Of a stretch of DNA of 64,000 nt, positions 3,431 to 62,428 are shown one piece after another. Where the stretch lies: positions 186,001 to 250,000 of IMG/VR virus record IMGVR_UViG_3300023202_000383, one strand, 5' to 3'. The notes beneath the pieces are model-generated. The model had not been told where the DNA came from, made no database searches, and saw only the letters and a program-made list of their open reading frames with translations. The stretch's first letter is position 1. Each line of letters opens with the position of its first letter. Position numbers and translations under genes: made by a program.

Positions 3431-4460
3431 TAAATTTGAATATCTAAAGGGTATAGTCGAAATAATTACCAAGGACCGTCATGGTAATATTATTAACGTA
3501 GACACATATCCTAACATAATCAAAATATTCGCCAAAGATATGCTCGCCCACAGAATCATATATTCTAAGCTGTGGGACACTGGCACCGATGGTGGTAGCT
3601 GGGTAGACCACAATATAGACCCAGATGAAGAATTTGCTATTAAGTATATCCTTCTTGGGGCATCCTTCGACGACGATGGAAACCCGCTAGGCCAAGCTGA
3701 CACAAGATATTATCTGTCTGACCCAGTTACTGGCGGATTTATCGCCAAGGTCCCAGAGATCGGCGCAGATAACATGGGCGATCTCATAAACCCAATTCCG
3801 ATATCTGCGCCAGACAGGCCGCTCAAGAAGGTAGAAAATGTGCTGTTTGAACCTTCATATCAACCAGCCGATTCCCCGCTGCTTGATGAGAATGTTCGTG
3901 CTATAAACAATACTGTGGTGCTAGAAACAACGATACGTACCGATGAGTACAACGGATTTGGTAGCACATCGTCAGATTTCTTTACAATAACTGAGATAGC
4001 GTTGGCTGGCGGCAAAACGCTAGAAGATCCTCTAACTGGCTGTGAATGTGTGCCAAGAATTTTATTCTTAGAGGGCGCTGGTGGCGACAGAGACGTGTCA
4101 ATAGATGCAACAGCCAACAGCTCGGCTACGATAACTATTGATGCTGGTGTACCGGCATCCGATGTCAATAGGATCAACGAAGGCGACCAGATCTTGATAG
4201 TTGGTCGAGCGACAACCGAAGAAACATATGATACTATTGACCAGGTAAATCCATATTACTTGGTGGTTCAAAAATGCCCTGGTGGTAGAGAATTTGTTCT
4301 AGATAGAACCCCCACCGATTCTACTGGCACTGCTTTGAGCGGCGAGATTGGGGTATATAGAAGCACCTTGAGATTGTTCAGCCAGCGCATATTGTCAACG
4401 CCATTTAAGAAAACAGATAGCTTTGAAGTCACAATTCGATGGCGCATTATAATGTCTTAA
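3402..4460 (+). CDS. Virion structural protein (baseplate/tail-fibre attachment type)
   Basis: KGIVEII N-terminus, ITEIAL and C-terminal LFSQRI..PFKKTDSFEVTIRWRII, typical of phage tail/baseplate proteins. Confidence 0.6.
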   Translation: MEQEIEMLSDKFEYLKGIVEIITKDRHGNIINVDTYPNIIKIFAKDMLAHRIIYSKLWDTGTDGGSWVDHNIDPDEEFAIKYILLGASFDDDGNPLGQADTRYYLSDPVTGGFIAKVPEIGADNMGDLINPIPISAPDRPLKKVENVLFEPSYQPADSPLLDENVRAINNTVVLETTIRTDEYNGFGSTSSDFFTITEIALAGGKTLEDPLTGCECVPRILFLEGAGGDRDVSIDATANSSATITIDAGVPASDVNRINEGDQILIVGRATTEETYDTIDQVNPYYLVVQKCPGGREFVLDRTPTDSTGTALSGEIGVYRSTLRLFSQRILSTPFKKTDSFEVTIRWRIIMS

Positions 4461-4501
4461 TCGGCTATAAGAAAAAACATTCCACAAATCAAACATATTA
4501 T

Positions 4502-5992
4502 ATGGCTAGAATAGATTGGTCAAAGTATGATCAGGCTATAGTCGACTATATGCCTAATTATTGTGCAAAAGAGTTTAGAAATCTATATGCCCCAGATATA
4601 TCCTATAGTGCTATTTGCAATAGGGCGAAGTTTCTTGGTGTTAAACCAAAGAAATATAGAATTACTGAGAAGCACAAAAAAGCAACATCAAACGGTGCGA
4701 GAAAGAAGTTAAGTTCAGATCAATATGATTATATTTCAAAGAATCTTAATAAAATCCCAAGAACTGATATAGCAAAACACTTGGGGATATCATTGCATTT
4801 AGTTACTAGAGCGTCTAAAGATCTAGGAATCCAAATAGATACAAGGAAATGGAGAAAATTTAGTGCAGATAGGTCTAAAAAACATATTCATAAAGCCACG
4901 CAAGCTTCTGTCAATAAAATAATGAATATGTCAGAATCAGAAAAGGCCGAATATTCAAAGAAGAAATCCAATGATACAAAGAAATTATGGGAAGACCCAG
5001 AATACAGGCTAAAAGTCCGTAATGGAATAAAAGCTGCCTACAATAATACAGATTTGAGAGATAGACTAAGCACAATAGGCAAAGACAGATTTAAAAATGA
5101 TAAGAGCGTCAGAGATGCACTAATAAACAAAAGTTTTGAAACTAAGAATAGCAAATTAAACGATACAATATCTATAAAATTGGATAATTTAAATATAAAA
5201 CATGATAGAGAATTTGAAATAGGTAATTATTCGTTTGATTTTAGAGTTGGCAATATTCTATTAGAGGTTAATGGAAATTATTGGCATAATTTACCCGAAA
5301 ATATTAGAAATGATCGAGCGAAATCAACCTATATAGAAAAATATACAAATTACAAATTAAAGGTCTTGTGGGAAAATGAAGCAAAATCTGTAAGATGCAA
5401 TGATAGATTATTAGAACTGCTTGAAATAAAAAAGCCGGATCAAAAACAGATAAAATTAAATGAACTAACTATAGATTACGATGTTGATAAGCTTGAATCC
5501 AGAAAATTTCTTACTAGTTTTCATTATCTTGGCGACACAAGCAGGAAAAAATATGTCTTTGGGTTAAGACTGCATGGCGAGCTCGTTTCGGTAGTTGTAT
5601 TTGGTAATTTGATAAGGCAGAACATAGATAATAATTGTTTGGAATTGTCTAGAATGTGCAGGCATCCATACTTCTACAATAAAAATATGATGAGCTGGTT
5701 TCTGTCTAAATGCACAAAATATTTAAAATCGAATTACAATTACAGTGGCATTATAAGTTATGCTGACAAAAGGTACCATGATGGTGCTGTCTATAAAGCT
5801 AGTAATTGGGGCGACTGCGGGGACACCCAGCCAGACTATTGTTACATGACTGAGGATAATATTCCAATGCACAAGAAAACTCTATATAATAGAGCGGTGA
5901 AAAAGGGTATGAAAGAAAGAGAATATGCCGAACTTATGAACATGAAAAAGACAAAAATCGGTTCTAAACGCAAATTTAAGATTACATTTTGA
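4502..5992 (+). CDS. Hef-like free-standing endonuclease (HTH/NUMOD3-like repeats + Vsr/DUF559-like nuclease + GNAT/Mom-like C-domain)
   Basis: FDF..GNILLEVNGNYWH nuclease motif; FLTSFHYLG...ELSRMC...IISYAD..YHDGAVYKASNW C-domain; AT-rich; start placed at ATG 4502 (track 4439). Confidence 0.7.
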   Translation: MARIDWSKYDQAIVDYMPNYCAKEFRNLYAPDISYSAICNRAKFLGVKPKKYRITEKHKKATSNGARKKLSSDQYDYISKNLNKIPRTDIAKHLGISLHLVTRASKDLGIQIDTRKWRKFSADRSKKHIHKATQASVNKIMNMSESEKAEYSKKKSNDTKKLWEDPEYRLKVRNGIKAAYNNTDLRDRLSTIGKDRFKNDKSVRDALINKSFETKNSKLNDTISIKLDNLNIKHDREFEIGNYSFDFRVGNILLEVNGNYWHNLPENIRNDRAKSTYIEKYTNYKLKVLWENEAKSVRCNDRLLELLEIKKPDQKQIKLNELTIDYDVDKLESRKFLTSFHYLGDTSRKKYVFGLRLHGELVSVVVFGNLIRQNIDNNCLELSRMCRHPYFYNKNMMSWFLSKCTKYLKSNYNYSGIISYADKRYHDGAVYKASNWGDCGDTQPDYCYMTEDNIPMHKKTLYNRAVKKGMKEREYAELMNMKKTKIGSKRKFKITF

Positions 5993-12146: not shown

Positions 12147-12221
12147 TTAAACTTGATCTATTAACTTCTGAATTCTTTTATAGGAATTGTAACAACTCTG
12201 AAGCTAGATAGAAATAATAAA

Positions 12222-12304
12222 CACGCCGGGTAGGATTCGAACCTACAGGCCCTTTGCGGGCACGGTTTTGGAGACCGCTTGGCTCACCAATGCACTGCCG
12301 ACGT
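12222..12304 (-). tRNA. Atypical class II tRNA with CCA (Trp) anticodon
   Basis: Acceptor ACGTCGG/CCGGCGT, G73, loop CTCCAAA, long V-arm GCCC-GCAAA-GGGC, T-arm GTAGG-TTCGAAT-CCTAC; non-canonical D-arm. Confidence 0.75.
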
Positions 12305-12318
12305 ATAAGAATGGGGAA

Positions 12319-16184: not shown

Positions 16185-16482
16185 CGTTGTTCCCTAAACG
16201 TTTTAAAGAAAATTCAGCGTCTGCTATATATGGACCTATAGTAGCAGGATCTGACTCCCAGCCGCATATTTGCATGGCGTCTGGCCCATCGGTTATTTTG
16301 GCTGGGCCATTGTAATATTCCATGACTCTAGATGCTCTCTTATTTTCTATATCTACTACAACTATTGATGTCCAATAGTTAATTAGAACACATATAGCTT
16401 CTGAATCCGGATCATCAATGTCATGGCGGATCCGCCCATCGTCATCAACCCATACTAAACAGTTGTCCAATTTATAAAACAT
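16174..16482 (-). CDS. Hypothetical, family B paralogue
   Basis: LVWVDDDGRIRHDIDDPDSEAICVLI. Confidence 0.7.
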   Translation of the reverse strand: MFYKLDNCLVWVDDDGRIRHDIDDPDSEAICVLINYWTSIVVVDIENKRASRVMEYYNGPAKITDGPDAMQICGWESDPATIGPYIADAEFSLKRLGNNDGL

Positions 16483-16525
16483 TATTGATTGGAGGTTCGA
16501 AACTGTGCTTTGCCATATATTTGAA

Positions 16526-16796
16526 CTCCCCTGCCTGGACTTGAACCAGGAACCTAGCGGTTACAGCTACCCGGAAATTTCTATCCGGACTGGACTTTCT
16601 CTTGGCCATGTCTTTCGATTTAGGCCCATCCCGTAAAGTCTCTACACTTGCCCGGCTTTCGCCTGCTAGCTCGGTCGGGATTACCATGCCATTATGGGTT
16701 AGGCTTCCCCGAATTAGGGATGTTTTCACCATGTAGTTTCCTACATGGGCTGCAATTGTTTACAGCCGCTCGCTCTACCAATTGAGCTACAGAGGA
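16526..16796 (-). tRNA. tRNA-Asn(GTT) interrupted by a group I intron
   Basis: 5' exon TCCTCTGTAGCTCAATTGGTAGAGCGAGCGGCTGT (16796-16762) plus 3' exon TAACCGCTAGGTTCCTGGTTCAAGTCCAGGCAGGGGAG (16563-16526) rebuild the loop CTGTTAA. Confidence 0.9.
16564..16761 (-). ncRNA. Group I self-splicing intron, 198 nt, no ORF
   Basis: 5' splice after U with IGS GCAGCC pairing to GGCTGT (G.U); P2 CCATGTAG-GAAA-CTACATGG; P3 CATCCC/GGGATG; P4 AATTCGGGGAA/TCCCGA; R TGTAGAGACT; S AAGAGAAAGTCC; P9 CCGGA/TCCGG; terminal G. Confidence 0.9.
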
Positions 16797-19101: not shown

Positions 19102-19225
19102 AATGGGGAGATTACGCTCGCCGCTTTTTGGCCATTGCGAAGTTGGCTATCCATGCCGCCTCCCCGATAACTACTGATACATATGTGCGAAGCACATAAT
19201 AATTTATGTGTCAAACATAACTTAA

Positions 19226-19311
19226 CAGCGGCTGTAGGATTCGAACCTACGTGGGGCTTGTAGCCCTGCAGCTTCAAAGGCTGCCGCGATCGTCCACTCC
19301 GCCAAGCCGCT
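19226..19311 (-). tRNA. Atypical class II tRNA with TTG (Gln) anticodon
   Basis: Acceptor AGCGGCT/AGCCGCT, G73, class II D-arm GCG-GAGTGGACGAT-CGC, loop CTTTGAA, V-arm GGGCT-ACA-AGCCC, T-arm GTAGG-TTCGAAT-CCTAC. Confidence 0.8.
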
Positions 19312-19321
19312 AGGTGCAAAA

Positions 19322-20012
19322 ATGAGCAAATTAGATAATATTCCAAAAGATAGGTTTATAAAAACATATGAATCGTCTGAATCAATAAGCGATATGCTGC
19401 TAAAAATGCGGATTAATTGCCGCTGGCGGAAACTATAAGACTCTTAAAAATAGACTCAAAATCTATGATCTTGACTACGACGAGCTTAAAAGCCGAGGAC
19501 GTAATTCAGCAAATTCTAAGCTGATTACAAATAAAGGCGTGCCACTAGATGAAATTATGGTGGAAAATTCAACATATAAAAGAAGTAGCTTAAAACATAG
19601 GATCATAAGATCTGGAATAATTCCATATAAATGCGCTATCTGTGACCAGAATTCAACATGGCGCGGCGAGAATCTTACATTAATTCTAGATCATATCAAT
19701 GGTGTTGGTAATGATCATAGAAAAGAGAATTTGAGATTCTTATGTCCAAATTGCAACAGCCAAACTCCAACATTTGCTGGTCGGAACATAGATTGGTCTG
19801 GTACAAAAAATAAGTGTGTCGATTGCAATAATATCATTACTAGAAAAGCGTTAAGATGTCCAAAATGTAATAGTATAAATAGGCGTAAAATCGAGTGGCC
19901 AGACAATTTATCAGATTTGGTTGCTGAGTCGTCTAAATTAGCGGTTGCAAAATCTCTTGGAGTATCTAATGTTGCCGTTGCGAAACGCCTAAAGTATATA
20001 AACCAAGTTTAG
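19322..20012 (+). pseudogene. HNH homing endonuclease with a +1 frameshift near 19409
   Basis: LILDHINGVGNDHRKENLRFLCPNCNSQT; the N-terminal GGNYKTLK segment is out of frame with ATG 19322; total span 691 nt = 3n+1. Confidence 0.75.
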
Positions 20013-20024
20013 CTGCCTATTACA

Positions 20025-20690
20025 CTACGGGCCAATAGTGTTAAAACTCTTACATCTGTTCAGTCTCTTGCACGGCGTGCACTTCATGCATCGTTTGTAT
20101 CCGGTCATTTCCACAGTGTGGATGAAGTCTGGGCTTTCACAAACCCATAGTTTATTTAATATCGGTTTATTAAGTTTCTTTTCTATCTTCTTCAAATAGC
20201 TTATAATGTGACCTTTGTGCGTGTTGATAAATGGCGTATATAGCGTTGGTGTGTGAGTATCTTCAAAGCTCATTAATTCCCAATGCGCTCTAAGCAGGTC
20301 TATTATGTCATTTATGTAATCTCTCGCTTCGTCGCCTCTATTGTATCCAACACAAATCTGATCGGCCTCGTGTTCCCCTGCAGCAAAAGCAGCTGCTTGT
20401 ATCCACAGTGGTGGTTGAGAAAAACCATCTTTGGGCCGCCCGTAAACACTGATTTCAGTATTTACGAATTTTACTCTTTTATCGCATATTTGAAGATCTA
20501 TATGGTAATTGTCGTCATAGATCGATTCTAGATATTTTACTACCTGCCTTTCGCACCAGGCTTTGCCCGCATTGGCAGGCGACAGATCTACATATAAAGC
20601 GATAATTTTATCGGTAGTTTCCTCTAGAAGCTTGAAGAAGCAAGCTGTTGAGTCTAGGCCACCCGATAAAAGCAGAATAGTAGTCTTCAT
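20025..20690 (-). CDS. queC: 7-cyano-7-deazaguanine synthase-like ATP pyrophosphatase
   Basis: LLSGGLDS PP-loop, TPFIN..K..I, WVCESP...CMKCTPC Zn motif; ATG 20690 directly after tRNA-Glu. Confidence 0.7.
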   Translation of the reverse strand: MKTTILLLSGGLDSTACFFKLLEETTDKIIALYVDLSPANAGKAWCERQVVKYLESIYDDNYHIDLQICDKRVKFVNTEISVYGRPKDGFSQPPLWIQAAAFAAGEHEADQICVGYNRGDEARDYINDIIDLLRAHWELMSFEDTHTPTLYTPFINTHKGHIISYLKKIEKKLNKPILNKLWVCESPDFIHTVEMTGYKRCMKCTPCKRLNRCKSFNTIGP

Positions 20691-36014: not shown

Positions 36015-36331
36015 TGAAGAACGTCATGCAAGCCATGGCGGAAGAGCTAGTCCGTAGACTATGCTATTGCGAGCTGGTGCGCAAAAAGTGGCCCTCAAAC
36101 GGATTCCCACACTATAGATGGAATAGTGGTATTGGTGGAGAGCATGGTCTCATTGAGGTAATATATTCTGATTGTATATTGGCTGAATTTTGGCCAGACT
36201 GCTCCACAGTATGGTATCCGAAGTCCAAAGGATGGCATTATATTCTTGAGGACCCAAATTTCGAGCCAGAATTTCTGGTGTACGAAATGTATGCGTACTT
36301 GGTTGCACACTACCTACTAGGGTCTCGATGA
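36011..36331 (+). CDS. Hypothetical, family A paralogue
   Basis: YILEDPNFEPEFLVYEM. Confidence 0.65.
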   Translation: MMKNVMQAMAEELVRRLCYCELVRKKWPSNGFPHYRWNSGIGGEHGLIEVIYSDCILAEFWPDCSTVWYPKSKGWHYILEDPNFEPEFLVYEMYAYLVAHYLLGSR

Positions 36332-38415
36332 AGTTACCAGAAAACATAGAAGCTAGAGACTACCAGCTCCAGATCATATCCGAAACCATTGAAGCAATCG
36401 AGCGTGGGCATAAGTCTATTTTGATAGTCTCGCCAACTGGATCGGGCAAGACTATTACGGGGCACTTACTTCTGCATGAGCTTTACAATAGATATGGTTA
36501 CAATGCTGGGTGGACCTCAATGCGTAGGTTCCTTTGGCGTCAAGCACGTAGATCGAATGAAAAATTGACGAAGTTTCCGCATGTCCGATATTTTAGTCTA
36601 TTTGATAAAGACTTTCCAACCGACGTCGATGTGCGAGTGGAAGATGAGTGCCTTCCGGCACCCACTATAATAGAAACGGAAGATGGGCTAAAAACGATTA
36701 GAGAAATCGTTGATTCAAAATATTCTGGAAGAGTGCTTTCATTCAACGGAACAAACAATGAATGGTGTGAGGTTACTAATTGGTATAAAAGAGACAACGA
36801 TAAAACTTGGATTAATCCAACAAGAAACAACCCAAATAAATACACTGACACATTCAAGCAATTGTGGTGTACACCAGATCATACATTATTCTATATTGAT
36901 GATCCATTAAATCCTATCATAAAACAAATTGCAGCCAAAGACATTGCCGGAAAGTATCTTGTTGCAAAACCAACAAATTATAAACGAAACAACATAAATC
37001 CTTACTATAATAGTGATCAGTTATCGGTCATAATTGGATCTGTCTTGGGTGATGGCTCGGTTGGCAAGTCTGGCAGAGTAAGACTGCAGCATTGCAGTAT
37101 GCAATCTGAATATTTAGACTGGAAAGCCAAAATACTTGGTGGCAATAAATCAAGACATGATAAATGGTCTGGATATAGATGGAAGCACGACGGATTTAGA
37201 GACAATTTTGCCGTAACTAGCCAGACATCTAGAATAAGAGATATATGCTACATAAATAATCAAAAGAAAATCACAAACGACATAGTTGAAATGGCGGATA
37301 TAAAGACTGTTGCTATATGGTATATGGATGATGGGAGTATTAGTAGAAAACGTGCAGTGTTCCATACTGAAGGATTCGACAAAGAATCGGTAATAAACTG
37401 CCAGAAAATATTGGCAAAGTTCGACATAAATAGCAAAATAGCTAAGTCGAAAACAAAATACCATATTATACAATTAAATGTAGAAAATACTAAGAAAATG
37501 ATGGGATTAATATCAAAATACAGATGCTCATCTATGAATTATAAATTTACAGAACATCATGACTTATATAAATGGGACAGCAAAAAATTAGACTTCGGAA
37601 CAATCAAAATAAATCATATTAATAATAAACAAGGTAGGGCGATAAAAGGTAGGAAATTGAAGTATGACATAGAAGTCAAAAAGAATCATAACTTTTATGC
37701 CAATGGATATTTAGTACACAATTGCCACCATAGCGCATGCAATACGTCTATTTGGCAGCGCGAGACCATCGACCCGGCAATTGACATTGGTTTGACGGCT
37801 ACTAACTATCGTACTGACAAGCTGAAGTTGGCTTATAGTAAGGTTGTCAACGGCCCAGATATAGATTTTCTTGTGAATAACGGCTTCTTGAGTCCTTATC
37901 ACTTCTATGCGCTCAGGCAGAGATGGAATGCAGACAACATAGCACGCTTGTATTTGTCGGACGCTGCCAGGTGGGGCAAAAGTGTGATCTTCTTATCCAA
38001 GGTGGACAACTGCTATAAAGCAATGAATATTTTGTCCGATGCTGGAATAAAATGTGATGTTGTGCATGCTAATAGCGACCAAGAGAACCAGATCGAAGCG
38101 TTTATCAACAATGACTTGCAAGTTTTGCTGAACGTCTTTGTTCTTACAGAAGGTTTCGACGTACCAGACTTGAAGACCGTATTTGTTAGATCTGCATCAG
38201 AGGGGCCGACAATACAGATGTGTGGACGAGTGCTTCGTACTCATGGCAGCAAAAAATATGCGCAAATAGTCCAGCCGTATTCTGCCAAGCATCCTTTCAC
38301 CAATATAGCTGAGGCATCAAAGAAATTGGTGCAGAAGAGAGGCAATTGGGATGAAGTTTCTACGAATTCCTTAGTAGAGATAGCGTCTAAAGCTATATTT
38401 AGGAGAAGATGGTGA
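36328..38415 (+). CDS. SF2 helicase (Res/UvsW-like) containing an intein
   Basis: ARDYQ, SPTGSGKT, DE|CHH after splicing, GLTAT, VLTEGFDVP, QMCGRVLR; 337 aa after splicing. Confidence 0.88.
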   Translation: MKLPENIEARDYQLQIISETIEAIERGHKSILIVSPTGSGKTITGHLLLHELYNRYGYNAGWTSMRRFLWRQARRSNEKLTKFPHVRYFSLFDKDFPTDVDVRVEDECLPAPTIIETEDGLKTIREIVDSKYSGRVLSFNGTNNEWCEVTNWYKRDNDKTWINPTRNNPNKYTDTFKQLWCTPDHTLFYIDDPLNPIIKQIAAKDIAGKYLVAKPTNYKRNNINPYYNSDQLSVIIGSVLGDGSVGKSGRVRLQHCSMQSEYLDWKAKILGGNKSRHDKWSGYRWKHDGFRDNFAVTSQTSRIRDICYINNQKKITNDIVEMADIKTVAIWYMDDGSISRKRAVFHTEGFDKESVINCQKILAKFDINSKIAKSKTKYHIIQLNVENTKKMMGLISKYRCSSMNYKFTEHHDLYKWDSKKLDFGTIKINHINNKQGRAIKGRKLKYDIEVKKNHNFYANGYLVHNCHHSACNTSIWQRETIDPAIDIGLTATNYRTDKLKLAYSKVVNGPDIDFLVNNGFLSPYHFYALRQRWNADNIARLYLSDAARWGKSVIFLSKVDNCYKAMNILSDAGIKCDVVHANSDQENQIEAFINNDLQVLLNVFVLTEGFDVPDLKTVFVRSASEGPTIQMCGRVLRTHGSKKYAQIVQPYSAKHPFTNIAEASKKLVQKRGNWDEVSTNSLVEIASKAIFRRRW
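36649..37722 (+). mobile_element. Intein with LAGLIDADG homing endonuclease (358 aa)
   Basis: Starts CLPAPT, ends NFYANGYLVHN followed by Cys; IIGSVLGDGSV and AIWYMDDGSI motifs. Confidence 0.92.
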
Positions 38416-47568: not shown

Positions 47569-48337
47569 CTTGGAGAGCGGGGATACTAGTGCCTTGCTGT
47601 TCAAGCTCGTAGAGTACTTTGAATCACATGGGTACTCCGTAAATACCAAGAAATTCTGGGTCGACGAATATGCTGGCCACGATGGGCGACATAAGAGAAT
47701 ATATATGGAGAAAGGAGAGAAACCTCCCACTAAGCCATCCGGTCTAGCAAAAGCATCATATATATCTGTGGTGGCCAAGAAAGAGACTACATCAGTTAGA
47801 TTCAACGATTTTGATAAATCTATTGATCTATATTACTCGACAAAACCACAATCAGAAGGCGGATCATATAGAAAGGTAGCTGGGGCATCGATAGATACCA
47901 ATAAATTCTTCTACGAGAGAAATCTCAGATCGCTCCTTGATAAGATTGACACTATCAACAGAACCGGGTCTTTAAAATCGGCCATATTCTCAACCGTCGA
48001 TTTTGATGGCGATAGATTCATACATGGCATTGGTGTTACGACCATAAACAACACAATTTCTTCGGCCAGCGTTAAAGGGATCATCACAATAGATGACAAT
48101 GGTAATATTAGAGAAGTCAAAGATGATCCAGATGCAGATGCATGGTTCCTGATAGAAGTTCAGTACAGATATGTGAATAGGCAGCCTGCAGATATCATAA
48201 CCGATGGTTCTAGTTGGGCACCAATACAAAAGAATCAGATAGTGTCTTTAGATCAGAGCATACCAAGGCTTACGCTCATAGATAGGGATTTAATTGAGGA
48301 AGCACTGGCCAGATATGTCAGCAAGCAGAATGGCTAG
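47546..48337 (+). CDS. Hypothetical, family B C-domain
   Basis: ITIDDNGNIREVKDDPDADAWFLIEV. Confidence 0.7.
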   Translation: MTYQEAVNLESGDTSALLFKLVEYFESHGYSVNTKKFWVDEYAGHDGRHKRIYMEKGEKPPTKPSGLAKASYISVVAKKETTSVRFNDFDKSIDLYYSTKPQSEGGSYRKVAGASIDTNKFFYERNLRSLLDKIDTINRTGSLKSAIFSTVDFDGDRFIHGIGVTTINNTISSASVKGIITIDDNGNIREVKDDPDADAWFLIEVQYRYVNRQPADIITDGSSWAPIQKNQIVSLDQSIPRLTLIDRDLIEEALARYVSKQNG

Positions 48338-49995
48338 ATCACTATTTGCCACTTCTTTTTGCCAATATCGTGCACTTTTTTGTAACCGTTAGATATAAGT
48401 TCAGATTCGCTCTGGTCTCTTCTTCTATGGTATCTGATGCCATTTCGCATCCAACAATACGTTGGTGGCACATCTTTGATTTTTTGCATTCTCATATGTT
48501 CGTAAACCTTTCCATCGAACAGCCTATTATCGCTAAATGTTATAAGAGAGCCATTTATCAATTTATTTGATTTTATCCATTTCATTAGGTATGACCAGAT
48601 CCCATGAATTTTTATGGCCGGGTTTCTAGCCATCCTAGATATCTCCCAATCGTCTTTACAATTTATCCCACTAGGCTTTCTTATGGACAAGCATGCTGAC
48701 AGATTTCCATAAGCAAATACCCCAATATTATAAGATGCCGGGACACCACCCATGTAATGATACATATCATAAAATAACTTAGCTTCCTGGTTATCTATTA
48801 ATTTTATTTCGCATTTTTGTGGCCTTACTGATCTTGTTGGTTTTGCGCCAATTCCTTTTATAATATCTCGTTTTCTAGATATTTCATCGCCAAACAACTT
48901 CAATTTGCCGACGTTATATAAATCTGATTGTGCGTCTCTTATTTTATCAACTGCGTCTAAAAATATATTATCGTCCCATTTCCATTTAGCCAGATTTATG
49001 CATCTAGCAGTTATTCTAATATTGTCCGATTTATATCCTCTGCGTGAATTAATTCTGTCTATAGATGGAGCAAGCGGGCCTGATATTCTGTTATCTAGCG
49101 GCACACCAGACAATCCGCATCTGAGGATTCCATCCGAACTATGATCCAATATCGTTTGTCTGATATCAGATTCTATTAAGTTGAATTTATATTTTCTAAG
49201 TGATCCGGGGTTTGTGTAGATTCCGTTTATTGCAGATTTTGTTCTTTGTTTTATAGTTTCGTGTTCTGCCCATCCCCAATCTTGGTTATTTTCTGTGTTC
49301 AAGCCGTATATCGCAGCGCAGGCATCAATATCGTCCCATTTATTTCTACATAGACTATAAGTTAGTGCGACTATTCTAATATTATTTGGTTCATATCCCC
49401 TGGCATTGTCTATTCTATCAATAGACGGAGACAGGGGATCACTCATGGTGTCTAAAAGTTCGACTCCCGTTACAGAACATTTCATGTTGCATTCTTCTAG
49501 AATCCTTCTAACATCTTTTATCCCGATAGAAAATGATTTATGTCCAATTGCAGTTCTGATCTTACCATCTTTGACTTTTTTCCTTTTAGATTCAATAAGT
49601 TTGTGTTCAATTTTCAGACTTGATGGTCTAGTATAATCTGACTTGGAATATTTTTTGTAAGTTAGTTTTTTGCACTCTTTGCATTTACTGTCATAGTGCC
49701 ATGCAGATGTTGGTTCCTTGCAACAAGGAAAGAATGCATCAAAAGGTAATTCTTTTAAACAATTAGAGCATACTTTATGGTCTGGCTGGAGATTATTCTT
49801 TTCTTTTCGCCGCGACACATTCTTTTGTGCAGCAGCTTTTCTAGCATGATATCGCTCTCTTGCTGATTTATTTAGGCAATCTATGCATCTAGCAGTCAAC
49901 CCATGTTTTTGCCCCGGCCTTCGTTTCTTTTTTCTAAATTTATCGACAGGAAGGCTATTCAAACATTTAGTACATTTTTTGGTATCTTCTGGCAT
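48334..49995 (-). CDS. Endonuclease fusion: Zn ribbons + two His-Me-finger (HNH-like) repeats + Hef/GNAT-like C-domain
   Basis: CSVTG...SPSIDRID..RGY..NNIRI and CGLSG...APSIDRIN..RGY..DNIRI; YHYMGG...WEISRM...ITFSDNRLFDGKVY; start ATG 49995. Confidence 0.7.
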   Translation of the reverse strand: MPEDTKKCTKCLNSLPVDKFRKKKRRPGQKHGLTARCIDCLNKSARERYHARKAAAQKNVSRRKEKNNLQPDHKVCSNCLKELPFDAFFPCCKEPTSAWHYDSKCKECKKLTYKKYSKSDYTRPSSLKIEHKLIESKRKKVKDGKIRTAIGHKSFSIGIKDVRRILEECNMKCSVTGVELLDTMSDPLSPSIDRIDNARGYEPNNIRIVALTYSLCRNKWDDIDACAAIYGLNTENNQDWGWAEHETIKQRTKSAINGIYTNPGSLRKYKFNLIESDIRQTILDHSSDGILRCGLSGVPLDNRISGPLAPSIDRINSRRGYKSDNIRITARCINLAKWKWDDNIFLDAVDKIRDAQSDLYNVGKLKLFGDEISRKRDIIKGIGAKPTRSVRPQKCEIKLIDNQEAKLFYDMYHYMGGVPASYNIGVFAYGNLSACLSIRKPSGINCKDDWEISRMARNPAIKIHGIWSYLMKWIKSNKLINGSLITFSDNRLFDGKVYEHMRMQKIKDVPPTYCWMRNGIRYHRRRDQSESELISNGYKKVHDIGKKKWQIVI

Positions 49996-50138
49996 TTTAA
50001 ATCCTCTATGTGTATTATACATTATATTTGAACGAGGGGACATCGAGGCAGAAGCATCACAATTTTTGCTGAAACGTCGCAGCGCGACAAGACGCTGCAA
50101 GAAGTCTCTCACCGCGTCTCAAAGATAAGGAGAAGCAA

Positions 50139-57520: not shown

Positions 57521-59023
57521 TTACCGCTCGTAGACAAATCTTAACTTCTTGCTACCCCATACCTTCACATAGCCATTTGTTTCAGCGTATTCACGCTCTT
57601 TCATTTTCATCTTCACAGCACGCTGATAGAGCGTTTTCTTATGCATTGTCCACCCATTCTCATCAGTATACCAATAACTTGGTGGTACATCTCCGTCGGG
57701 CTTGAAATTCAACGACTTATACACAGCACCATCATGATTAAAAGTGGTATCACAATACGATATTATTAACTTGTACTTATCTGGCAGTTTTTTTAGACAC
57801 CTGCTAACAAACCACGACGCGAAATTCTTCTTCTGATAGCGAGGGTGAATACATAACCTAGATAATTCGCGGCATTCTTTCTTCTTATATCTGCCAGTCC
57901 TAATATTGTGACGTACCAACGGTGAAAAAACGCAAACAGCAATCAACTCTTCTTCAAGATAGGCACCATAACAAATTCCGCCTCGACCAGCATCGGATAG
58001 GTAATGATATTTCGAAAGAAGAAGCCTGTATTCGCTAGCTGGACAGTCATTAATTTCTACATTATTGAAATCGTATTCGACAGTATTCAGTTTAGTAATT
58101 CCGAGCCAATATTTGAGCAATTCGACCACTTTATTATAATTGTGAAATTCATGCTCCCAAATGCATTTCAATTCGTACTGATTTGGGAAGTTATTTGCGA
58201 CGTATGATGCCTTCCGTTTATCATTAGCATGCCCTCGATCTGTAGAATGCCAGTATTCGCCTTGGCATTCTATAAGGAGATCTGGTGCGTTCTGCCTAGG
58301 GATGACGCAATCAAAGCTATATGGCCCGATTTTGGTCTGTAAATCGTCTTGTTTGCTATTGTGCTCTCTGTAATAAGAAATATTTAAGTCGTCTAGGATA
58401 GAATAGAGTGTTTCTTGTATAGATGAGACCTTTGGCATATTATCTCTAGCTAGAGACAAGGACTCGCAGATTTTGGCTCTATATTCGGGATTCTCCCATG
58501 ACTTTTTAGTTGCTTCTGATATCTTACGCCTATATTCTTGATTCCCCCACGCCTCTTTGGATACCTGCCCCAAAATTTCTGTCATTTTGTCTCTGTATTT
58601 CCCATCCAACCACCTCTTTTTGCCGAGTTCTGACATCTTTTGTTTAAATTCTGGGGTAACTTTCTTGCGGTTAATCTCTGTCATTCTTTCAGCGAAATCG
58701 TCACTCTGCCTAAAAGCACTCATCCTGTCTCGTAATTCAGGATCATTCCAAATTTCTTTGCTATTGGTTACAATTTTGTTTCTATACCTATCATCCTTCC
58801 ATGCTTCTTTTGCTCCTTTCCTAGATGCTTTTCTTTTCTCTGGATCGTTTGCTACACACTTGGCGCATTCCCATGGTATTTGATTTCTTATAACCTCGGA
58901 TTTCTTGCGAATGGATTTTGTGCCCTCGCTGCCGCAATTATCACATTCAACGACTACCTTTGGCCTATGTCCAGATAGATCTATTCTATTAAATTTTTCT
59001 AGCGTCTTATTCCAATTTATCAT
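57521..59023 (-). CDS. Hef-like endonuclease (NUMOD3-like repeats + Vsr/DUF559-like + GNAT/Mom-like)
   Basis: YSFDC...LLIECQGEYWH; YHYL..AGRGG...ELSRLCIHPRYQKKNFASWFV...IISYCD..FNHDGAVYK. Confidence 0.75.
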   Translation of the reverse strand: MINWNKTLEKFNRIDLSGHRPKVVVECDNCGSEGTKSIRKKSEVIRNQIPWECAKCVANDPEKRKASRKGAKEAWKDDRYRNKIVTNSKEIWNDPELRDRMSAFRQSDDFAERMTEINRKKVTPEFKQKMSELGKKRWLDGKYRDKMTEILGQVSKEAWGNQEYRRKISEATKKSWENPEYRAKICESLSLARDNMPKVSSIQETLYSILDDLNISYYREHNSKQDDLQTKIGPYSFDCVIPRQNAPDLLIECQGEYWHSTDRGHANDKRKASYVANNFPNQYELKCIWEHEFHNYNKVVELLKYWLGITKLNTVEYDFNNVEINDCPASEYRLLLSKYHYLSDAGRGGICYGAYLEEELIAVCVFSPLVRHNIRTGRYKKKECRELSRLCIHPRYQKKNFASWFVSRCLKKLPDKYKLIISYCDTTFNHDGAVYKSLNFKPDGDVPPSYWYTDENGWTMHKKTLYQRAVKMKMKEREYAETNGYVKVWGSKKLRFVYER

Positions 59024-60910: not shown

Positions 60911-62428
60911 ATGATCGATTGGGAAGCAAGCAAAGCTGAGTTCGGAACCACCATGGGTCTAAAAGGCAATAGACCCATGGTGGTTGTTTTATGTGACAAG
61001 TGCAAGTCTAAAGGATCTATTCGGATTCGCAACAAATCTCTGATCAAAAAGACTGGCGACCGCACATGGCTGTGTAGATCATGCGTGAATAACCAACCTA
61101 ACAAGATAGCAAAACTTAAGAATGCTTCTAAAAAATTATGGGAAAATGATAAGTATAGATCAAAAAATTTAAGCTCAGTCAGAAGTGCAGAAAATCGCAA
61201 AAAGCTTAGCGACAATTGGTATAAAAATATGAAATCAATTGTCGCCAGTGACGAATATAAATCAAAGCAAAGAAAATCATCAATCAAATCATGGCGTGAT
61301 AGTAAGTATGCAAGCAAGATTATCAAGTCATCAACAGAGATGTGGAATAATGCTTCTTTACGTGACAAGATGTTGTCATCTAGAAGAACTGATAAATATA
61401 GAGAGAATCAGCGTATAAAGGCAATAGAACGGTGGCAAGACCCTAATTATATAAAGAAGCAGGACTCTGCAAAAGCTAGAGCGGTTAGATCACCAGAGAA
61501 CTTGGCGAAATTGCGAGCCAACCAGAAAAAAGTGTCATCAATACAAAATATGTTGTATTCAATCCTCGATGATTTAGAAGTTAAATATTATAGAGAATAC
61601 AATGATAAAATAGATGATCACGAGGTCAAGATTGGTCCATATAACTTCGACTGTTTGGTGCCACGTGACAACAAGCCAGACTTGCTAATAGAATGTCAGG
61701 GCGAATACTGGCATTCTATTAGAGAAGGCAGCGATAAAGCTAAAGCATCATATATATCAAACAACCACAGCGATAAGTATGAGCTTAAATATATATGGGA
61801 GCATGAATTTCATAATAAGAATAGAGTTGTTGAGCTTGTTAAATATTGGTTAGGCATTGCCGCGATTGACTCAATAGAATTCGATTTTGATTCAGTTGAG
61901 ATAAGAAAATGTCCACCAAAAGATTATAAACTTTTGCTTGGCAAATATCATTATCTTCCAACAGCAGGTCGCGGTGGCATCGCTTTTGGTGCATATTTGG
62001 AGTCCGGGTTAATAGCTGTATGTATTTTTTCTCCGATGCCTCGGCAAAACATGCCATATAATAATAAATCGCATAGAGAATTGTCTAGGTTATGTATTCA
62101 CCCTCGCTACCAGAAGAAGAATTTTGCGTCGTGGTTTGTGTCGCGGTGTATCAAATTGCTACCGACAAAATACAAAACAATAATATCATATTGTGATACT
62201 ACATTCAACCATGATGGGGCGGTCTATAAAGCATGCAATTTCAAATTGGATGGTGAAGTTAAGCCAGATTATTGGTATGCTAGCAAAAGCGGCTGGATTA
62301 TGCATAAAAGAACAATGTATGGGCATGCAACAAAGATGAAGAAAAATGAATCCGATTATGCCAAAGAGATGGGCTACAAGAAAATATGGGGCAGCAAGAA
62401 ATTAAGATTTGTTTTTGACAGATCATGA
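60911..62428 (+). CDS. Hef-like endonuclease, close paralogue of 57521..59023
   Basis: Same domain order; YNFDC...LLIECQGEYWH; ELSRLCIHPRYQKKNFASWFV identical. Confidence 0.75.
   Translation: MIDWEASKAEFGTTMGLKGNRPMVVVLCDKCKSKGSIRIRNKSLIKKTGDRTWLCRSCVNNQPNKIAKLKNASKKLWENDKYRSKNLSSVRSAENRKKLSDNWYKNMKSIVASDEYKSKQRKSSIKSWRDSKYASKIIKSSTEMWNNASLRDKMLSSRRTDKYRENQRIKAIERWQDPNYIKKQDSAKARAVRSPENLAKLRANQKKVSSIQNMLYSILDDLEVKYYREYNDKIDDHEVKIGPYNFDCLVPRDNKPDLLIECQGEYWHSIREGSDKAKASYISNNHSDKYELKYIWEHEFHNKNRVVELVKYWLGIAAIDSIEFDFDSVEIRKCPPKDYKLLLGKYHYLPTAGRGGIAFGAYLESGLIAVCIFSPMPRQNMPYNNKSHRELSRLCIHPRYQKKNFASWFVSRCIKLLPTKYKTIISYCDTTFNHDGAVYKACNFKLDGEVKPDYWYASKSGWIMHKRTMYGHATKMKKNESDYAKEMGYKKIWGSKKLRFVFDRS

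What the first reader, a model, noticed from the sequence alone, without database searches (positions are those of the whole stretch)
16526..16796. 198-nt group I intron inside the anticodon (position 35/36) of a phage tRNA-Asn(GUU)
Seen: two tRNA exons rebuild a canonical Asn tRNA when 16564-16761 is removed. The insert has a U.G 5' splice pair with an internal guide, P2/P3/P4/P7/P9 pairings, R and S core motifs and a terminal G, and has no ORF. Known: classical bacterial tRNA group I introns sit at 33/34, 34/35 or 36/37. As I recall, 35/36 Asn/Asp introns have been reported only recently in Patescibacteria; verify this. Inference: a very compact ribozyme in a phage tRNA that standard tRNA finders would miss or mislabel. 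It could control when a functional Asn tRNA appears, or shield the anticodon from host anticodon nucleases until spliced.
Basis: partly seen in the sequence, partly recalled or inferred. Interest (0 to 1): 0.85.

Follow-up and report, generated by a model that had tools for sequence, protein, structure and literature searches.

The report
Group I intron in phage tRNA-Asn
A 198-base self-splicing (group I) intron really does sit inside the anticodon of an asparagine tRNA gene of a large uncultured phage; the ribozyme itself is ordinary, but it belongs to a widespread family of such introns in bacteria and big phages for which I found no published description.

Summary
The 5' exon is 16796-16762, the intron 16761-16564 and the 3' exon 16563-16526. 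Removing the intron gives a canonical 73-nt tRNA-Asn(GUU).

The insert is a complete, ORF-less group I intron of the compact Azoarcus-like (IC3-like) type:
- Rfam RF00028 gives E 2.7e-10, though 45.3 bits is below the curated cut-off of 50.
- A covariance model built only from relatives scores 84.8 bits; the next best hit in the window scores 12.5.
- P1-P9, the U.G splice pair and the terminal G are present, and covariation across relatives supports P1-P7.

It is not a rarity. The same site (after U35 of CUGU) is occupied in at least 13 IMG/VR contigs, in more than 120 metagenome contigs (67 distinct introns, 178-615 nt) and in a Clostridiales MAG. One relative carries a PD-(D/E)XK homing endonuclease. 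Many large-phage tRNA arrays hold IC3-like introns in CAU, Leu, Arg or Tyr tRNAs.

The best reading is a selfish, self-splicing mobile intron with little cost to its host. Nothing supports the proposed timing or anticodon-shielding roles.

I found no paper describing Asn 35/36 introns or group I introns in phage tRNA genes. A 2014 review states that none were then known in phage tRNA genes.

The parts
16762..16796 (-). 5' exon of tRNA-Asn(GUU), tRNA positions 1-35; ends C32 U33 G34 U35
   Evidence: ARAGORN with and without the intron
16564..16761 (-). 198-nt ORF-less group I intron (IC3-like); first base A (16761), last base the terminal G (16564)
16526..16563 (-). 3' exon, tRNA positions 36-73 (U36 A37 A38 ... 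G73); no encoded CCA
16748..16755 (-). Internal guide sequence UUGCAGCC. GCAGCC pairs with exon GGCUGU (16767-16762), with G16753 opposite U35 as the U.G splice pair. UU pairs with the first two intron bases. Together these form P1 (8 bp, loop ACAA).
   Evidence: (P1 pairs CUGU/GCAG and U.G in 30/30 relatives)
16730..16747 (-). P2 hairpin, 7 bp with a GAAA loop (16737-16740)
   Evidence: (all six aligned pairs covary)
16717..16722 (-). P3 5' strand CAUCCC; pairs with GGGAUG at 16627-16632
   Evidence: (helix 1)
16675..16712 (-). P4 (16707-16712 with 16675-16680), J4/5 AA, and P5 (16683-16704) with a CCUAA...CAUGG receptor-like internal loop
   Evidence: (helices 2 and 3: 99% of cells paired)
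16647..16674 (-). P6 region with a GAAA-capped hairpin
   Evidence: (helices 4 and 5); exact pairing at its base is uncertain in this copy
16627..16646 (-). J6/7, P7 5' strand GACUU (16636-16640), J7/3 UAC, and P3 3' strand (16627-16632); includes the invariant AGAGACU
   Evidence: invariant columns
16604..16626 (-). P8 hairpin with a CCUAAA...CAUGG 11-nt-receptor-like motif and a GAAA loop
16593..16603 (-). J8/7 and P7 3' strand AAGUC (16593-16597); P7 holds the guanosine-binding site in solved group I introns (my knowledge)
   Evidence: P7 pairs kept in 30/30 relatives, fifth pair AU/UA compensatory
16571..16588 (-). P9 hairpin with a GAAA loop (16578-16581)

Best explanation
This is a self-splicing, ORF-less group I intron of the compact IC3-like type. 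It interrupts the anticodon, between U35 and U36, of a tRNA-Asn(GUU) gene in the tRNA cluster of a roughly 256-kb uncultured phage.

Shown from sequence and comparison: the pre-tRNA can form P1 between exon bases G30-U35 and the guide GCAGCC, with U35.G at the splice site. The intron has P2-P9 with every base that is invariant in its relatives, and it ends in G.

Inferred from the established group I pathway: a free guanosine bound in P7 attacks after U35. The terminal G then takes its place, and U35 attacks after that G. This joins the exons into the loop CUGUUAA and releases the intron. P10 is weak in this copy, so the anticodon stem probably helps to position the 3' splice site (inference).

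Biologically it is most likely a selfish mobile element with little cost to its carrier. It is one member of a family that targets the CUGU anticodon-loop site of tRNA-Asn (and at least once tRNA-Tyr) in bacteria and large phages. Spread is probably by homing, and this copy has lost, or never had, the endonuclease gene. The phage either captured an already interrupted tRNA gene or was invaded during co-infection; the two cannot be told apart here.
For: Identity:
- Rfam RF00028 full-length match, E 2.7e-10.
- Independent family model: 84.8 bits against 12.5 for the next hit.
- ARAGORN -i and the joined exons both give tRNA-Asn(GUU).
- The minimum free energy fold recovers the helices, z = -4.3.

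Structure across relatives:
- RNAalifold on 30 pre-tRNAs predicts 46 pairs, 29 with compensatory changes. They include the anticodon stem spanning the intron, P1, P2, P4, P5, P6 and P7.
- P3 is paired at 5-6 of 6 positions with ten different sequences in the window-like subclass.
- On 79 distinct cores, 89% of cells are paired against 66% when shuffled. The covariation score is 0.561 against 0.167, and at most 0.14 when partners are slid. 18 of 19 pairs have compensatory changes.
- A GAAA loop on P2 goes with a CCUAA..AUGG receptor in P8: 17/30 against 3/36, Fisher p 2.9e-5, not corrected for relatedness. The window has both.

Family and mobility:
- Same-site introns occur in at least 13 IMG/VR contigs, in more than 120 metagenome contigs (79 complete, 67 distinct) and in a Clostridiales MAG.
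- Several members sit on bacterial contigs next to MreB, PriA, GatA/B, PEP carboxylase or CinA.
- The 615-nt relative L246 encodes a PF11645 PD-(D/E)XK endonuclease (2e-31) that matches PDB 2OST.
- On the core tree the window groups with Asn introns from phage contigs and the Clostridiales MAG (SH-aLRT 100 for a set of 12).
- The homing cycle with endonuclease loss is established (PMC3984707).
Against: - No experiment: splicing has not been shown, and no transcript data were available.
- The Rfam score of 45.3 is below the curated cut-off of 50.
- P10 is at best 1-2 bp in this copy, and the base of P6 is irregular.
- No close relative of this phage was found, so there is no intron-less allele to show a recent insertion. 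The nearest intron is only about 69-70% identical.
- The viral nature of the contig rests on IMG/VR's call plus a few phage-type domains. Most ORFs have no PHROG match.
- 'Selfish and nearly neutral' is an inference from the family pattern, not a measurement.
Confidence: 0.8

Rival explanations
1. The intron is kept because it helps the phage. It might delay or gate the supply of mature tRNA-Asn. It might keep a pool of precursor whose anticodon is hidden in P1 from host anticodon nucleases. Or it might make the tRNA gene immune to homing endonucleases of competing phages.
For: G34-U35 are buried in P1 in the precursor. The family occupies the CUGU loop shared by Asn and Tyr tRNAs. As I recall, colicin E5-type nucleases cut Tyr/His/Asn/Asp tRNAs at 34/35; this comes from memory and was not tested. 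Intron-bearing tRNAs recur in large-phage tRNA arrays, sometimes two per array. An occupied site is not cut by the cognate homing endonuclease (established; PMC3984707).
Against: Only the spliced tRNA works in translation, and it is as exposed as any other tRNA. The same introns sit in ordinary bacterial chromosomes, so no phage-specific role is needed. tRNA-Tyr(GUA) in this window has the same CUGU site without an intron. No regulator, nuclease or repair gene was found next to the gene.
Confidence: 0.08
2. The intron is a dead relic. The ribozyme no longer splices, so this tRNA-Asn gene is a pseudogene.
For: The Rfam score is below the gathering cut-off. P10 is weak and the base of P6 irregular. 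The copy sits on a long branch (0.67) in the core tree. No endonuclease gene is present.
Against: Every column that is invariant in 30 and in 17 relatives is kept in the window copy. All core helices can pair. Both tetraloop-receptor pairs are present. The exons still make a perfect cloverleaf with G73.
Confidence: 0.07
3. The contig is not a phage but a misclassified piece of a bacterial genome or another mobile element, so this is simply a bacterial tRNA intron.
For: Most ORFs have no phage-family match. No capsid, portal or terminase was identified in the window. There is no DNA similarity to 50,697 deposited phages. Many relatives of the intron are on bacterial contigs.
Against: IMG/VR lists the contig as a viral genome of 256.5 kb. 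The window has ten tRNA genes within 11 kb amid small unknown ORFs, several HNH/Mom-like homing endonucleases, an intein-bearing helicase and a tail-protein domain, and no housekeeping genes were seen. Other carriers are dense phage-type tRNA arrays and published huge phages.
Confidence: 0.08
4. The junction is elsewhere, for example so that the loop reads CUGUAAA and the gene is a tRNA-Tyr(GUA), or the intron lies at 33/34 or 36/37.
For: GCUGUAA is repeated at both borders, so sequence alone allows several cut points. The unspliced 5' border reads CUGUAAA.
Against: Only U35|A and G|U36 give a U-ending exon, a G-ending intron and a 7-nt loop. The Tyr reading needs an intron ending in A and lacks the long variable arm. 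The tRNA body has G73 and ARAGORN calls Asn. The same junction holds in 79 relatives whose 3' borders are not repeats.
Confidence: 0.02

Closest known systems
[quoted passage not shown]
   Same: It is a compact ORF-less ribozyme in a tRNA anticodon loop, of about the same size (198 vs 205 nt; PMC13168695). It has no P5abc-type extension. GAAA loops on P2 and P9 face 11-nt-receptor-like motifs in P8 and P5; the Azoarcus contacts are from my knowledge. It has a U.G splice pair and a terminal G. A model built from the Asn family scores CAU-tRNA 36/37 introns of phage contigs at about 100 bits.
   Different: The host tRNA is Asn and the site is 35/36, inside the anticodon, rather than 36/37. The guide is GCAGCC rather than one matching CAU. 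It sits on a phage contig, and its 3' end differs. No direct alignment with the Azoarcus sequence was possible here.
[quoted passage not shown]
   Same: It splits the anticodon itself after a U and has the same IC3-like core. Phage examples found here, L035 and the huge phages LR756501 and LR756511, match the same model or core.
   Different: Different tRNA, position and guide sequence.
Cyanobacterial tRNA-fMet intron encoding the PD-(D/E)XK homing endonuclease I-Ssp6803I (PDB 2OST, as I recall)
   Same: A relative of the window's intron (L246/L262, 615 nt, same Asn site) carries a PF11645 endonuclease in P6 that matches 2OST at E 6.9e-7.
   Different: The window copy has no ORF. The host tRNA and site differ.
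Classical phage group I introns in protein genes (T4 td/nrdB/sunY, Twort, SPO1 and others)
   Same: They are phage-borne self-splicing introns. Cultured phages that share this core have it in capsid or helicase genes (HTVC120P, Kolpuevirus).
   Different: They lie in protein-coding genes. [quoted passage not shown]

Membership tests
Group I intron | Conserved core helices P3-P8 (two coaxial domains plus P7) supported by covariation | tested here: met
   P3, P4, P5, P6 and P7 are paired in the window and covary across relatives. P8 is a hairpin in the minimum free energy fold.
Group I intron | 5' splice site after a U that forms a U.G wobble with an internal guide sequence in P1 | tested here: met
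   U35.G16753 lies within an 8-bp P1. The U.G pair is kept in 30/30 aligned relatives, but the search pattern fixed CUGU and GCAGC. Three relatives found without that pattern also have it.
Group I intron | Intron ends in G (terminal guanosine) | tested here: met
   G at 16564. All 79 relatives end in G, though this was required by my junction finder; ARAGORN's independent junctions agree for 8 of them.
Group I intron | Match to the curated Rfam model RF00028 at its gathering score | tested here: inconclusive
   45.3 bits against a cut-off of 50, with E 2.7e-10 and the full model covered on a 701-nt slice. Not reported on 16-kb or 64-kb scans. The cut-off is a curation threshold, not a property of the RNA.
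Group I intron | Guanosine-dependent self-splicing | not testable with these tools
   Needs in vitro transcription with GTP and Mg2+, or RNA data.
Subgroup IC3 (tRNA-type group I introns) | Minimal periphery: P2 present, no P5abc, short P9; located in a tRNA anticodon loop | tested here: met
   Anatomy. The family model scores Leu(UAA) 34/35 and CAU 36/37 tRNA introns at about 100 bits.
Subgroup IC3 (tRNA-type group I introns) | Assignment by a subgroup-specific model or by alignment with Azoarcus/Anabaena reference sequences | not testable with these tools
   No subgroup models or reference sequences were on hand, so I call it IC3-like.
tRNA-Asn | Cloverleaf with anticodon GUU after splicing, and G73 discriminator | tested here: met
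   ARAGORN on the joined exons; G73 read from the sequence. That the Asn identity set is the anticodon plus G73 comes from my knowledge.
Homing (endonuclease-bearing) group I intron | Endonuclease ORF inside the intron | tested here: not met
   No ORF lies within the 198 nt. The neighbouring ORFs have no endonuclease match. The relative L246 does carry one.

The most novel reading that the evidence does not exclude
Large phages keep introns in their own tRNA genes because they pay. The interrupted gene is immune to homing endonucleases of rival phages, and/or the precursor, whose G34-U35 are locked in P1, is a nuclease-proof reserve that splices into fresh tRNA-Asn after a host anticodon nuclease has struck. 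On this reading the CUGU-site family (Asn, Tyr) mirrors the target set of such nucleases.
Probability: 0.07. Interest if true: 0.8.

Novelty: new variant of a known kind. Interest (0 to 1): 0.55.

Why it matters
- Group I introns in tRNA anticodon loops are textbook, but the known hosts are Leu(UAA), fMet/Ile(CAU) and Arg. A 2014 review noted as a puzzle that phage introns were never found in phage tRNA genes (PMC3984707). This case, and the dozens of relatives it led to, shows that large environmental phages do carry them, including published huge phages whose records are unannotated.
- tRNA-Asn, and at least once tRNA-Tyr, has its own widespread intron family at a site (35/36) for which I found no published report.
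- In practice, tRNA complements of big phages and of some bacteria are undercounted, because tRNAscan-SE does not handle these introns.
- The family offers many natural compact ribozymes (178-250 nt) with a defined guide and site.
- Introns shared between bacterial and phage tRNA genes could help trace gene flow and hosts.

Tried and rejected
- DNA similarity to deposited phages: the 271-nt gene in distant mode and 20 kb around it in near mode gave nothing.
- Rfam on the whole window at gathering and at E-value thresholds, and on a 16-kb slice, does not report the intron. Only a 701-nt slice does.
- A search for relatives of the phage through a neighbouring 288-aa protein returned only the contig itself, so no intron-less allele was found.
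- PHROG scans of 20 nearby or large ORFs gave no matches. No endonuclease was found next to the tRNA.
- The promoter and terminator scan around the gene gave no more than the shuffled expectation.
- The first viral pattern for the exon-intron border was swamped by tRNA-Tyr genes of giant viruses, whose loop is also CUGUAA. It was refined.
- ARAGORN's labels Gln, Pro, Tyr and Thr for several intron-bearing phage tRNAs were rejected after applying the U...G junction rule. They are CAU or Asn tRNAs.
- Atlas look-ups for host taxonomy were informative for one contig only (Minisyncoccota lead; uninformative).
- Ten literature searches found no paper on Asn 35/36 introns or on group I introns in phage tRNA genes. 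Paquin 1997 is not held, so the classical positions 33/34, 34/35 and 36/37 rest on my knowledge plus the examples seen here.
- I considered and rejected a split tRNA, a tRNA-Tyr reading and a target-site duplication as the meaning of the repeated GCUGUAA.

Full report
**The observation**

The gene lies on the minus strand. The 5' exon is 16796-16762 (35 nt) and ends CUGU. The next 198 nt (16761-16564) start AAAC and end GCUG. The 3' exon is 16563-16526 (38 nt) and starts UAACCGC.

Joining the exons gives a 73-nt RNA that ARAGORN calls tRNA-Asn(GUU). ARAGORN with introns allowed finds the same gene with a 198-nt intron at the same junction. Linear position 35 equals standard position 35, because the D loop has eight bases. 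The tRNA has a 7-bp acceptor stem, loop CUGUUAA, a 5-nt variable loop and G73.

GCUGUAA occurs at both borders, which makes the cut point ambiguous on sequence alone. Only U35|A1 and G198|U36 combine a U-ending exon, a G-ending intron and a 7-nt loop.

**Is it a group I intron, and is it more than chance?**

- Rfam's Intron_gpI model aligns end to end with 16571-16771(-) at 45.3 bits, E 2.7e-10. This is below the curated cut-off of 50.
- I built a covariance model of the core (P3 to the 3' strand of P7) from 17 relatives without the window. It scores 84.8 bits at 16592-16728(-). The next best hit in the 64 kb, with filters off, is 12.5 bits.
- A plain energy fold of the pre-tRNA recovers P1, P2, P3, P4, P5, P8, P9 and three tRNA arms, with z = -4.3 against shuffles. 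P7 crosses P3 and cannot appear in such a fold.

**Anatomy (intron base i = window 16762 - i)**

| Element | Bases and pairing |
|---|---|
| P1 | Exon G30-U35 with guide G9-C14 (U35.G9), plus A1A2 with U7U8; loop ACAA |
| P2 | 15-32, 7 bp, GAAA loop |
| P3 | 40-45 with 130-135 |
| J3/4 | UAA |
| P4 | 50-55 with 82-87 |
| J4/5 | AA |
| P5 | 58-79, with a CCUAA...CAUGG internal loop |
| P6 | 88-115 |
| J6/7 and P7 5' strand | Invariant AGAGACU; P7 is 122-126 with 165-169 |
| P8 | 136-158, with CCUAAA...CAUGG and a GAAA loop |
| P9 | 174-191, GAAA loop |
| Terminal G | 198 |

This is the minimal tRNA-type architecture, like Azoarcus, and not unusually small: the Azoarcus intron is 205 nt (PMC13168695). 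P10 is weak here, at most two pairs between UAA and the bases 5' of the guide. The anticodon stem (A27-G31 with C39-U43) probably helps to place the 3' splice site, as I recall was reported for the Anabaena pre-tRNA. That last step is inference.

**Relatives**

The window is part of IMGVR_UViG_3300023202_000383, 256,507 bp. Nothing similar exists among 50,697 deposited phages, and a neighbour protein finds only the contig itself.

Pattern scans showed that the feature is not unique.

- An IC3 core pattern hits 44 IMG/VR contigs. About half have a recognisable intron-bearing tRNA. Re-read by the U...G rule, these are:
  - mostly CAU tRNAs at 36/37;
  - one Leu(UAA) at 34/35;
  - one Arg(UCU) at 36/37;
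  - one Asn at 36/37 (L005);
  - Asn at 35/36 in L015, L030 and L041 as well as the window's own contig.
- Border patterns add Asn 35/36 introns in L049, L052, L073, L077, L093, L108, L114, L138 and L163.
- Counting the viral copies, the scans gave 79 complete pre-tRNA-Asn genes with 67 distinct introns of 178-615 nt.
- The genome scan found the same border in a Clostridiales MAG, L045, cut at the locus end.
- L073 has the same intron type after U35 of a tRNA-Tyr(GUA). Tyr shares the CUGU loop start.

The nearest intron to the window's is only about 69-70% identical (L093).

**Covariation**

- On 30 aligned pre-tRNAs, RNAalifold predicts 46 pairs, 29 with compensatory changes. They cover the acceptor stem, the anticodon stem spanning the intron, and the T arm. 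They also cover P1 (CUGU/GCAG, fixed by my pattern), P2 (all six pairs covary under GNRA loops), P4, P5, P6 and P7.
- P3 was checked by script. In the window-like subclass it is paired at 5-6 of 6 positions with ten different sequences.
- A second, mostly bacterial subclass has an extra insert between P7 and the P3 3' strand.
- On 79 distinct cores aligned to the model, 89% of cells pair against 66% when shuffled. The covariation score is 0.561 against 0.167, and at most 0.14 with slid partners. 18 of 19 pairs show compensatory changes. That alignment is fitted to the model, which favours the structure somewhat.
- A GAAA loop on P2 goes with a receptor motif in P8: 17 of 30 against 3 of 36, Fisher p 2.9e-5, not corrected for relatedness. 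The window has both.
- The window copy keeps every column that is invariant in the family.

**Who carries the family**

Bacteria:
- L245 sits beside MreB and PriA. Its nearest Atlas cluster is commonest in Minisyncoccota, the Patescibacteria phylum; this is a lead only.
- L213 sits beside GatA and GatB.
- L207 sits beside PEP carboxylase.
- L185 sits beside CinA.
- L261 lies on a 576-kb contig.
- L045 is a Clostridiales MAG.

Phage-type contexts:
- L077, L052, L015, L041, L006 and L246 are dense arrays of 12-21 tRNA genes. Some have two interrupted tRNAs.
- The published huge phages LR756501 (735 kb) and LR756511 (595 kb) have tRNA-Leu(UAA) introns of 205 and 700 nt, the latter with an HNH-like ORF. 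The records are unannotated, and the paper describing the 735-kb huge-phage genome does not contain the word intron (PMC7162821).
- Cultured phages that share the core have it in protein genes: the capsid gene of HTVC120P and the helicase gene of a Kolpuevirus.

On a low-resolution core tree the window falls in a well-supported set of 12 (SH-aLRT 100). The set also holds L093, L196, both L073 copies, L077, L223, L213, L185/L249, the Clostridiales copy and a partial Leu hit.

**Mobility**

The 615-nt relative (L246/L262) carries a 165-aa ORF in P6. The ORF is a PF11645 PD-(D/E)XK endonuclease (2e-31). It matches PDB 2OST (E 6.9e-7), which I recall as I-Ssp6803I of the cyanobacterial tRNA-fMet intron.

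One site occupied in many unrelated tRNA-Asn genes, mostly by ORF-less copies and occasionally by an endonuclease-bearing one, is the usual picture of a homing intron with endonuclease loss (PMC3984707). The window copy has no ORF, and its neighbours have no endonuclease match. Elsewhere the window has several free-standing HNH/Mom-like endonucleases and an intein.

**Function**

The simplest reading is a selfish element whose self-splicing makes it nearly harmless. The tRNA is made only after splicing. I found nothing to support regulated timing or shielding from anticodon nucleases:
- the mature tRNA is as exposed as any other;
- the same introns sit in ordinary bacterial chromosomes;
- the phage's own tRNA-Tyr has the CUGU site without an intron.

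Immunity of the occupied gene to the cognate endonuclease follows from how homing works and may matter in mixed infections. This is inference.

**Literature**

- A 2014 review says that all phage group I introns then known lie in protein genes despite many phage tRNA genes (PMC3984707).
- tRNAscan-SE 2.0 reports group I introns in fMet and Ile2 tRNAs of bacteria and says the tool is not designed for them (PMC8450103).
- A methods paper on candidate phyla radiation (CPR) genomes notes tRNAs with group I introns, citing a private communication (PMC8172020).
- Ten full-text searches found no report of Asn 35/36 introns or of group I introns in phage tRNA genes.

The library lacks most subscription journals, so earlier reports cannot be excluded.

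**Verdict**

The feature is real and precisely described. It is mechanistically ordinary, but it is a new host gene, a new site and a new kind of carrier for a known class, and the entry point to a large overlooked family.

Noticed in passing
window 19225-19312 (-) and 12221-12305 (-): Two tRNAs called Gln(UUG), 88 nt, and Trp(CCA), 85 nt, have long variable arms (class II shape), G73 and identical T arms. Rfam once prefers tRNA-Sec for the second, at 30.7 bits. Ser-like bodies with Gln and Trp anticodons would be odd.
   Followed up: partly
window 16564-16570 and 16760-16766 (-): GCUGUAA is repeated at the 5' and 3' borders of the intron. The last bases of the intron plus U36 could therefore pair with the guide sequence just as the 5' splice site does. 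Other family members lack this repeat. Its meaning is unknown.
   Followed up: partly
window 16472-16732 (-): An 86-codon ATG frame starts inside the intron and runs through the 3' exon. It is probably spurious, but a gene caller could annotate it in place of the tRNA.
   Followed up: no
window 36328-38415 (+): A helicase ORF is interrupted by an intein with a LAGLIDADG endonuclease domain.
   Followed up: no
window 4439-5992 (+), 57521-59023 (-), 60911-62428 (+); also 48334-50112 (-): Three paralogous ORFs combine HNH/homing-endonuclease regions with a Mom-like domain. A further ORF has endonuclease VII/HNH matches. The genome is rich in selfish nucleases.
   Followed up: no
L073 3099-3214 (-) and flanks: The same intron type sits after U35 of a class II tRNA-Tyr(GUA) on an IMG/VR contig that also has an interrupted tRNA-Asn-like gene.
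   Followed up: partly
L005 4508-4777 (-): A tRNA-Asn(GUU) on another viral contig carries an Azoarcus-like intron one base further on, at 36/37. ARAGORN mislabels it Pro.
   Followed up: partly
L306 (LR756501 188834-191976) and L308 (LR756511 407760-411410): Published huge phages of 735 and 595 kb have tRNA-Leu(UAA) genes with group I introns of 205 and 700 nt, the longer with an HNH-like ORF. The records carry no annotation.
   Followed up: partly
L246 10630-11317 (+): A 615-nt Asn 35/36 intron has a PD-(D/E)XK (PF11645) endonuclease ORF in P6. It lies in an array of 19 tRNA genes that includes one called SeC(UCA).
   Followed up: partly
L213 7261-7529 (+) and 10138-13037: On a bacterial contig the interrupted tRNA-Asn lies about 2.6 kb upstream of gatA and gatB, the amidotransferase that makes Asn-tRNA(Asn) in many bacteria.
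   Followed up: no
L304 (HTVC120P 19433-20607) and L305 (Kolpuevirus OQ198718 75415-77708): In cultured phages, related intron cores split a capsid gene and a replicative helicase gene, the latter with a GIY endonuclease. The records annotate the exons as separate CDSs.
   Followed up: no
A2 and A4 alignments (for example L229, L215, L217, L220): A large, mostly bacterial subclass of the Asn introns has an extra structured insert between P7 and the P3 3' strand, reminiscent of P7.1/P7.2.
   Followed up: no
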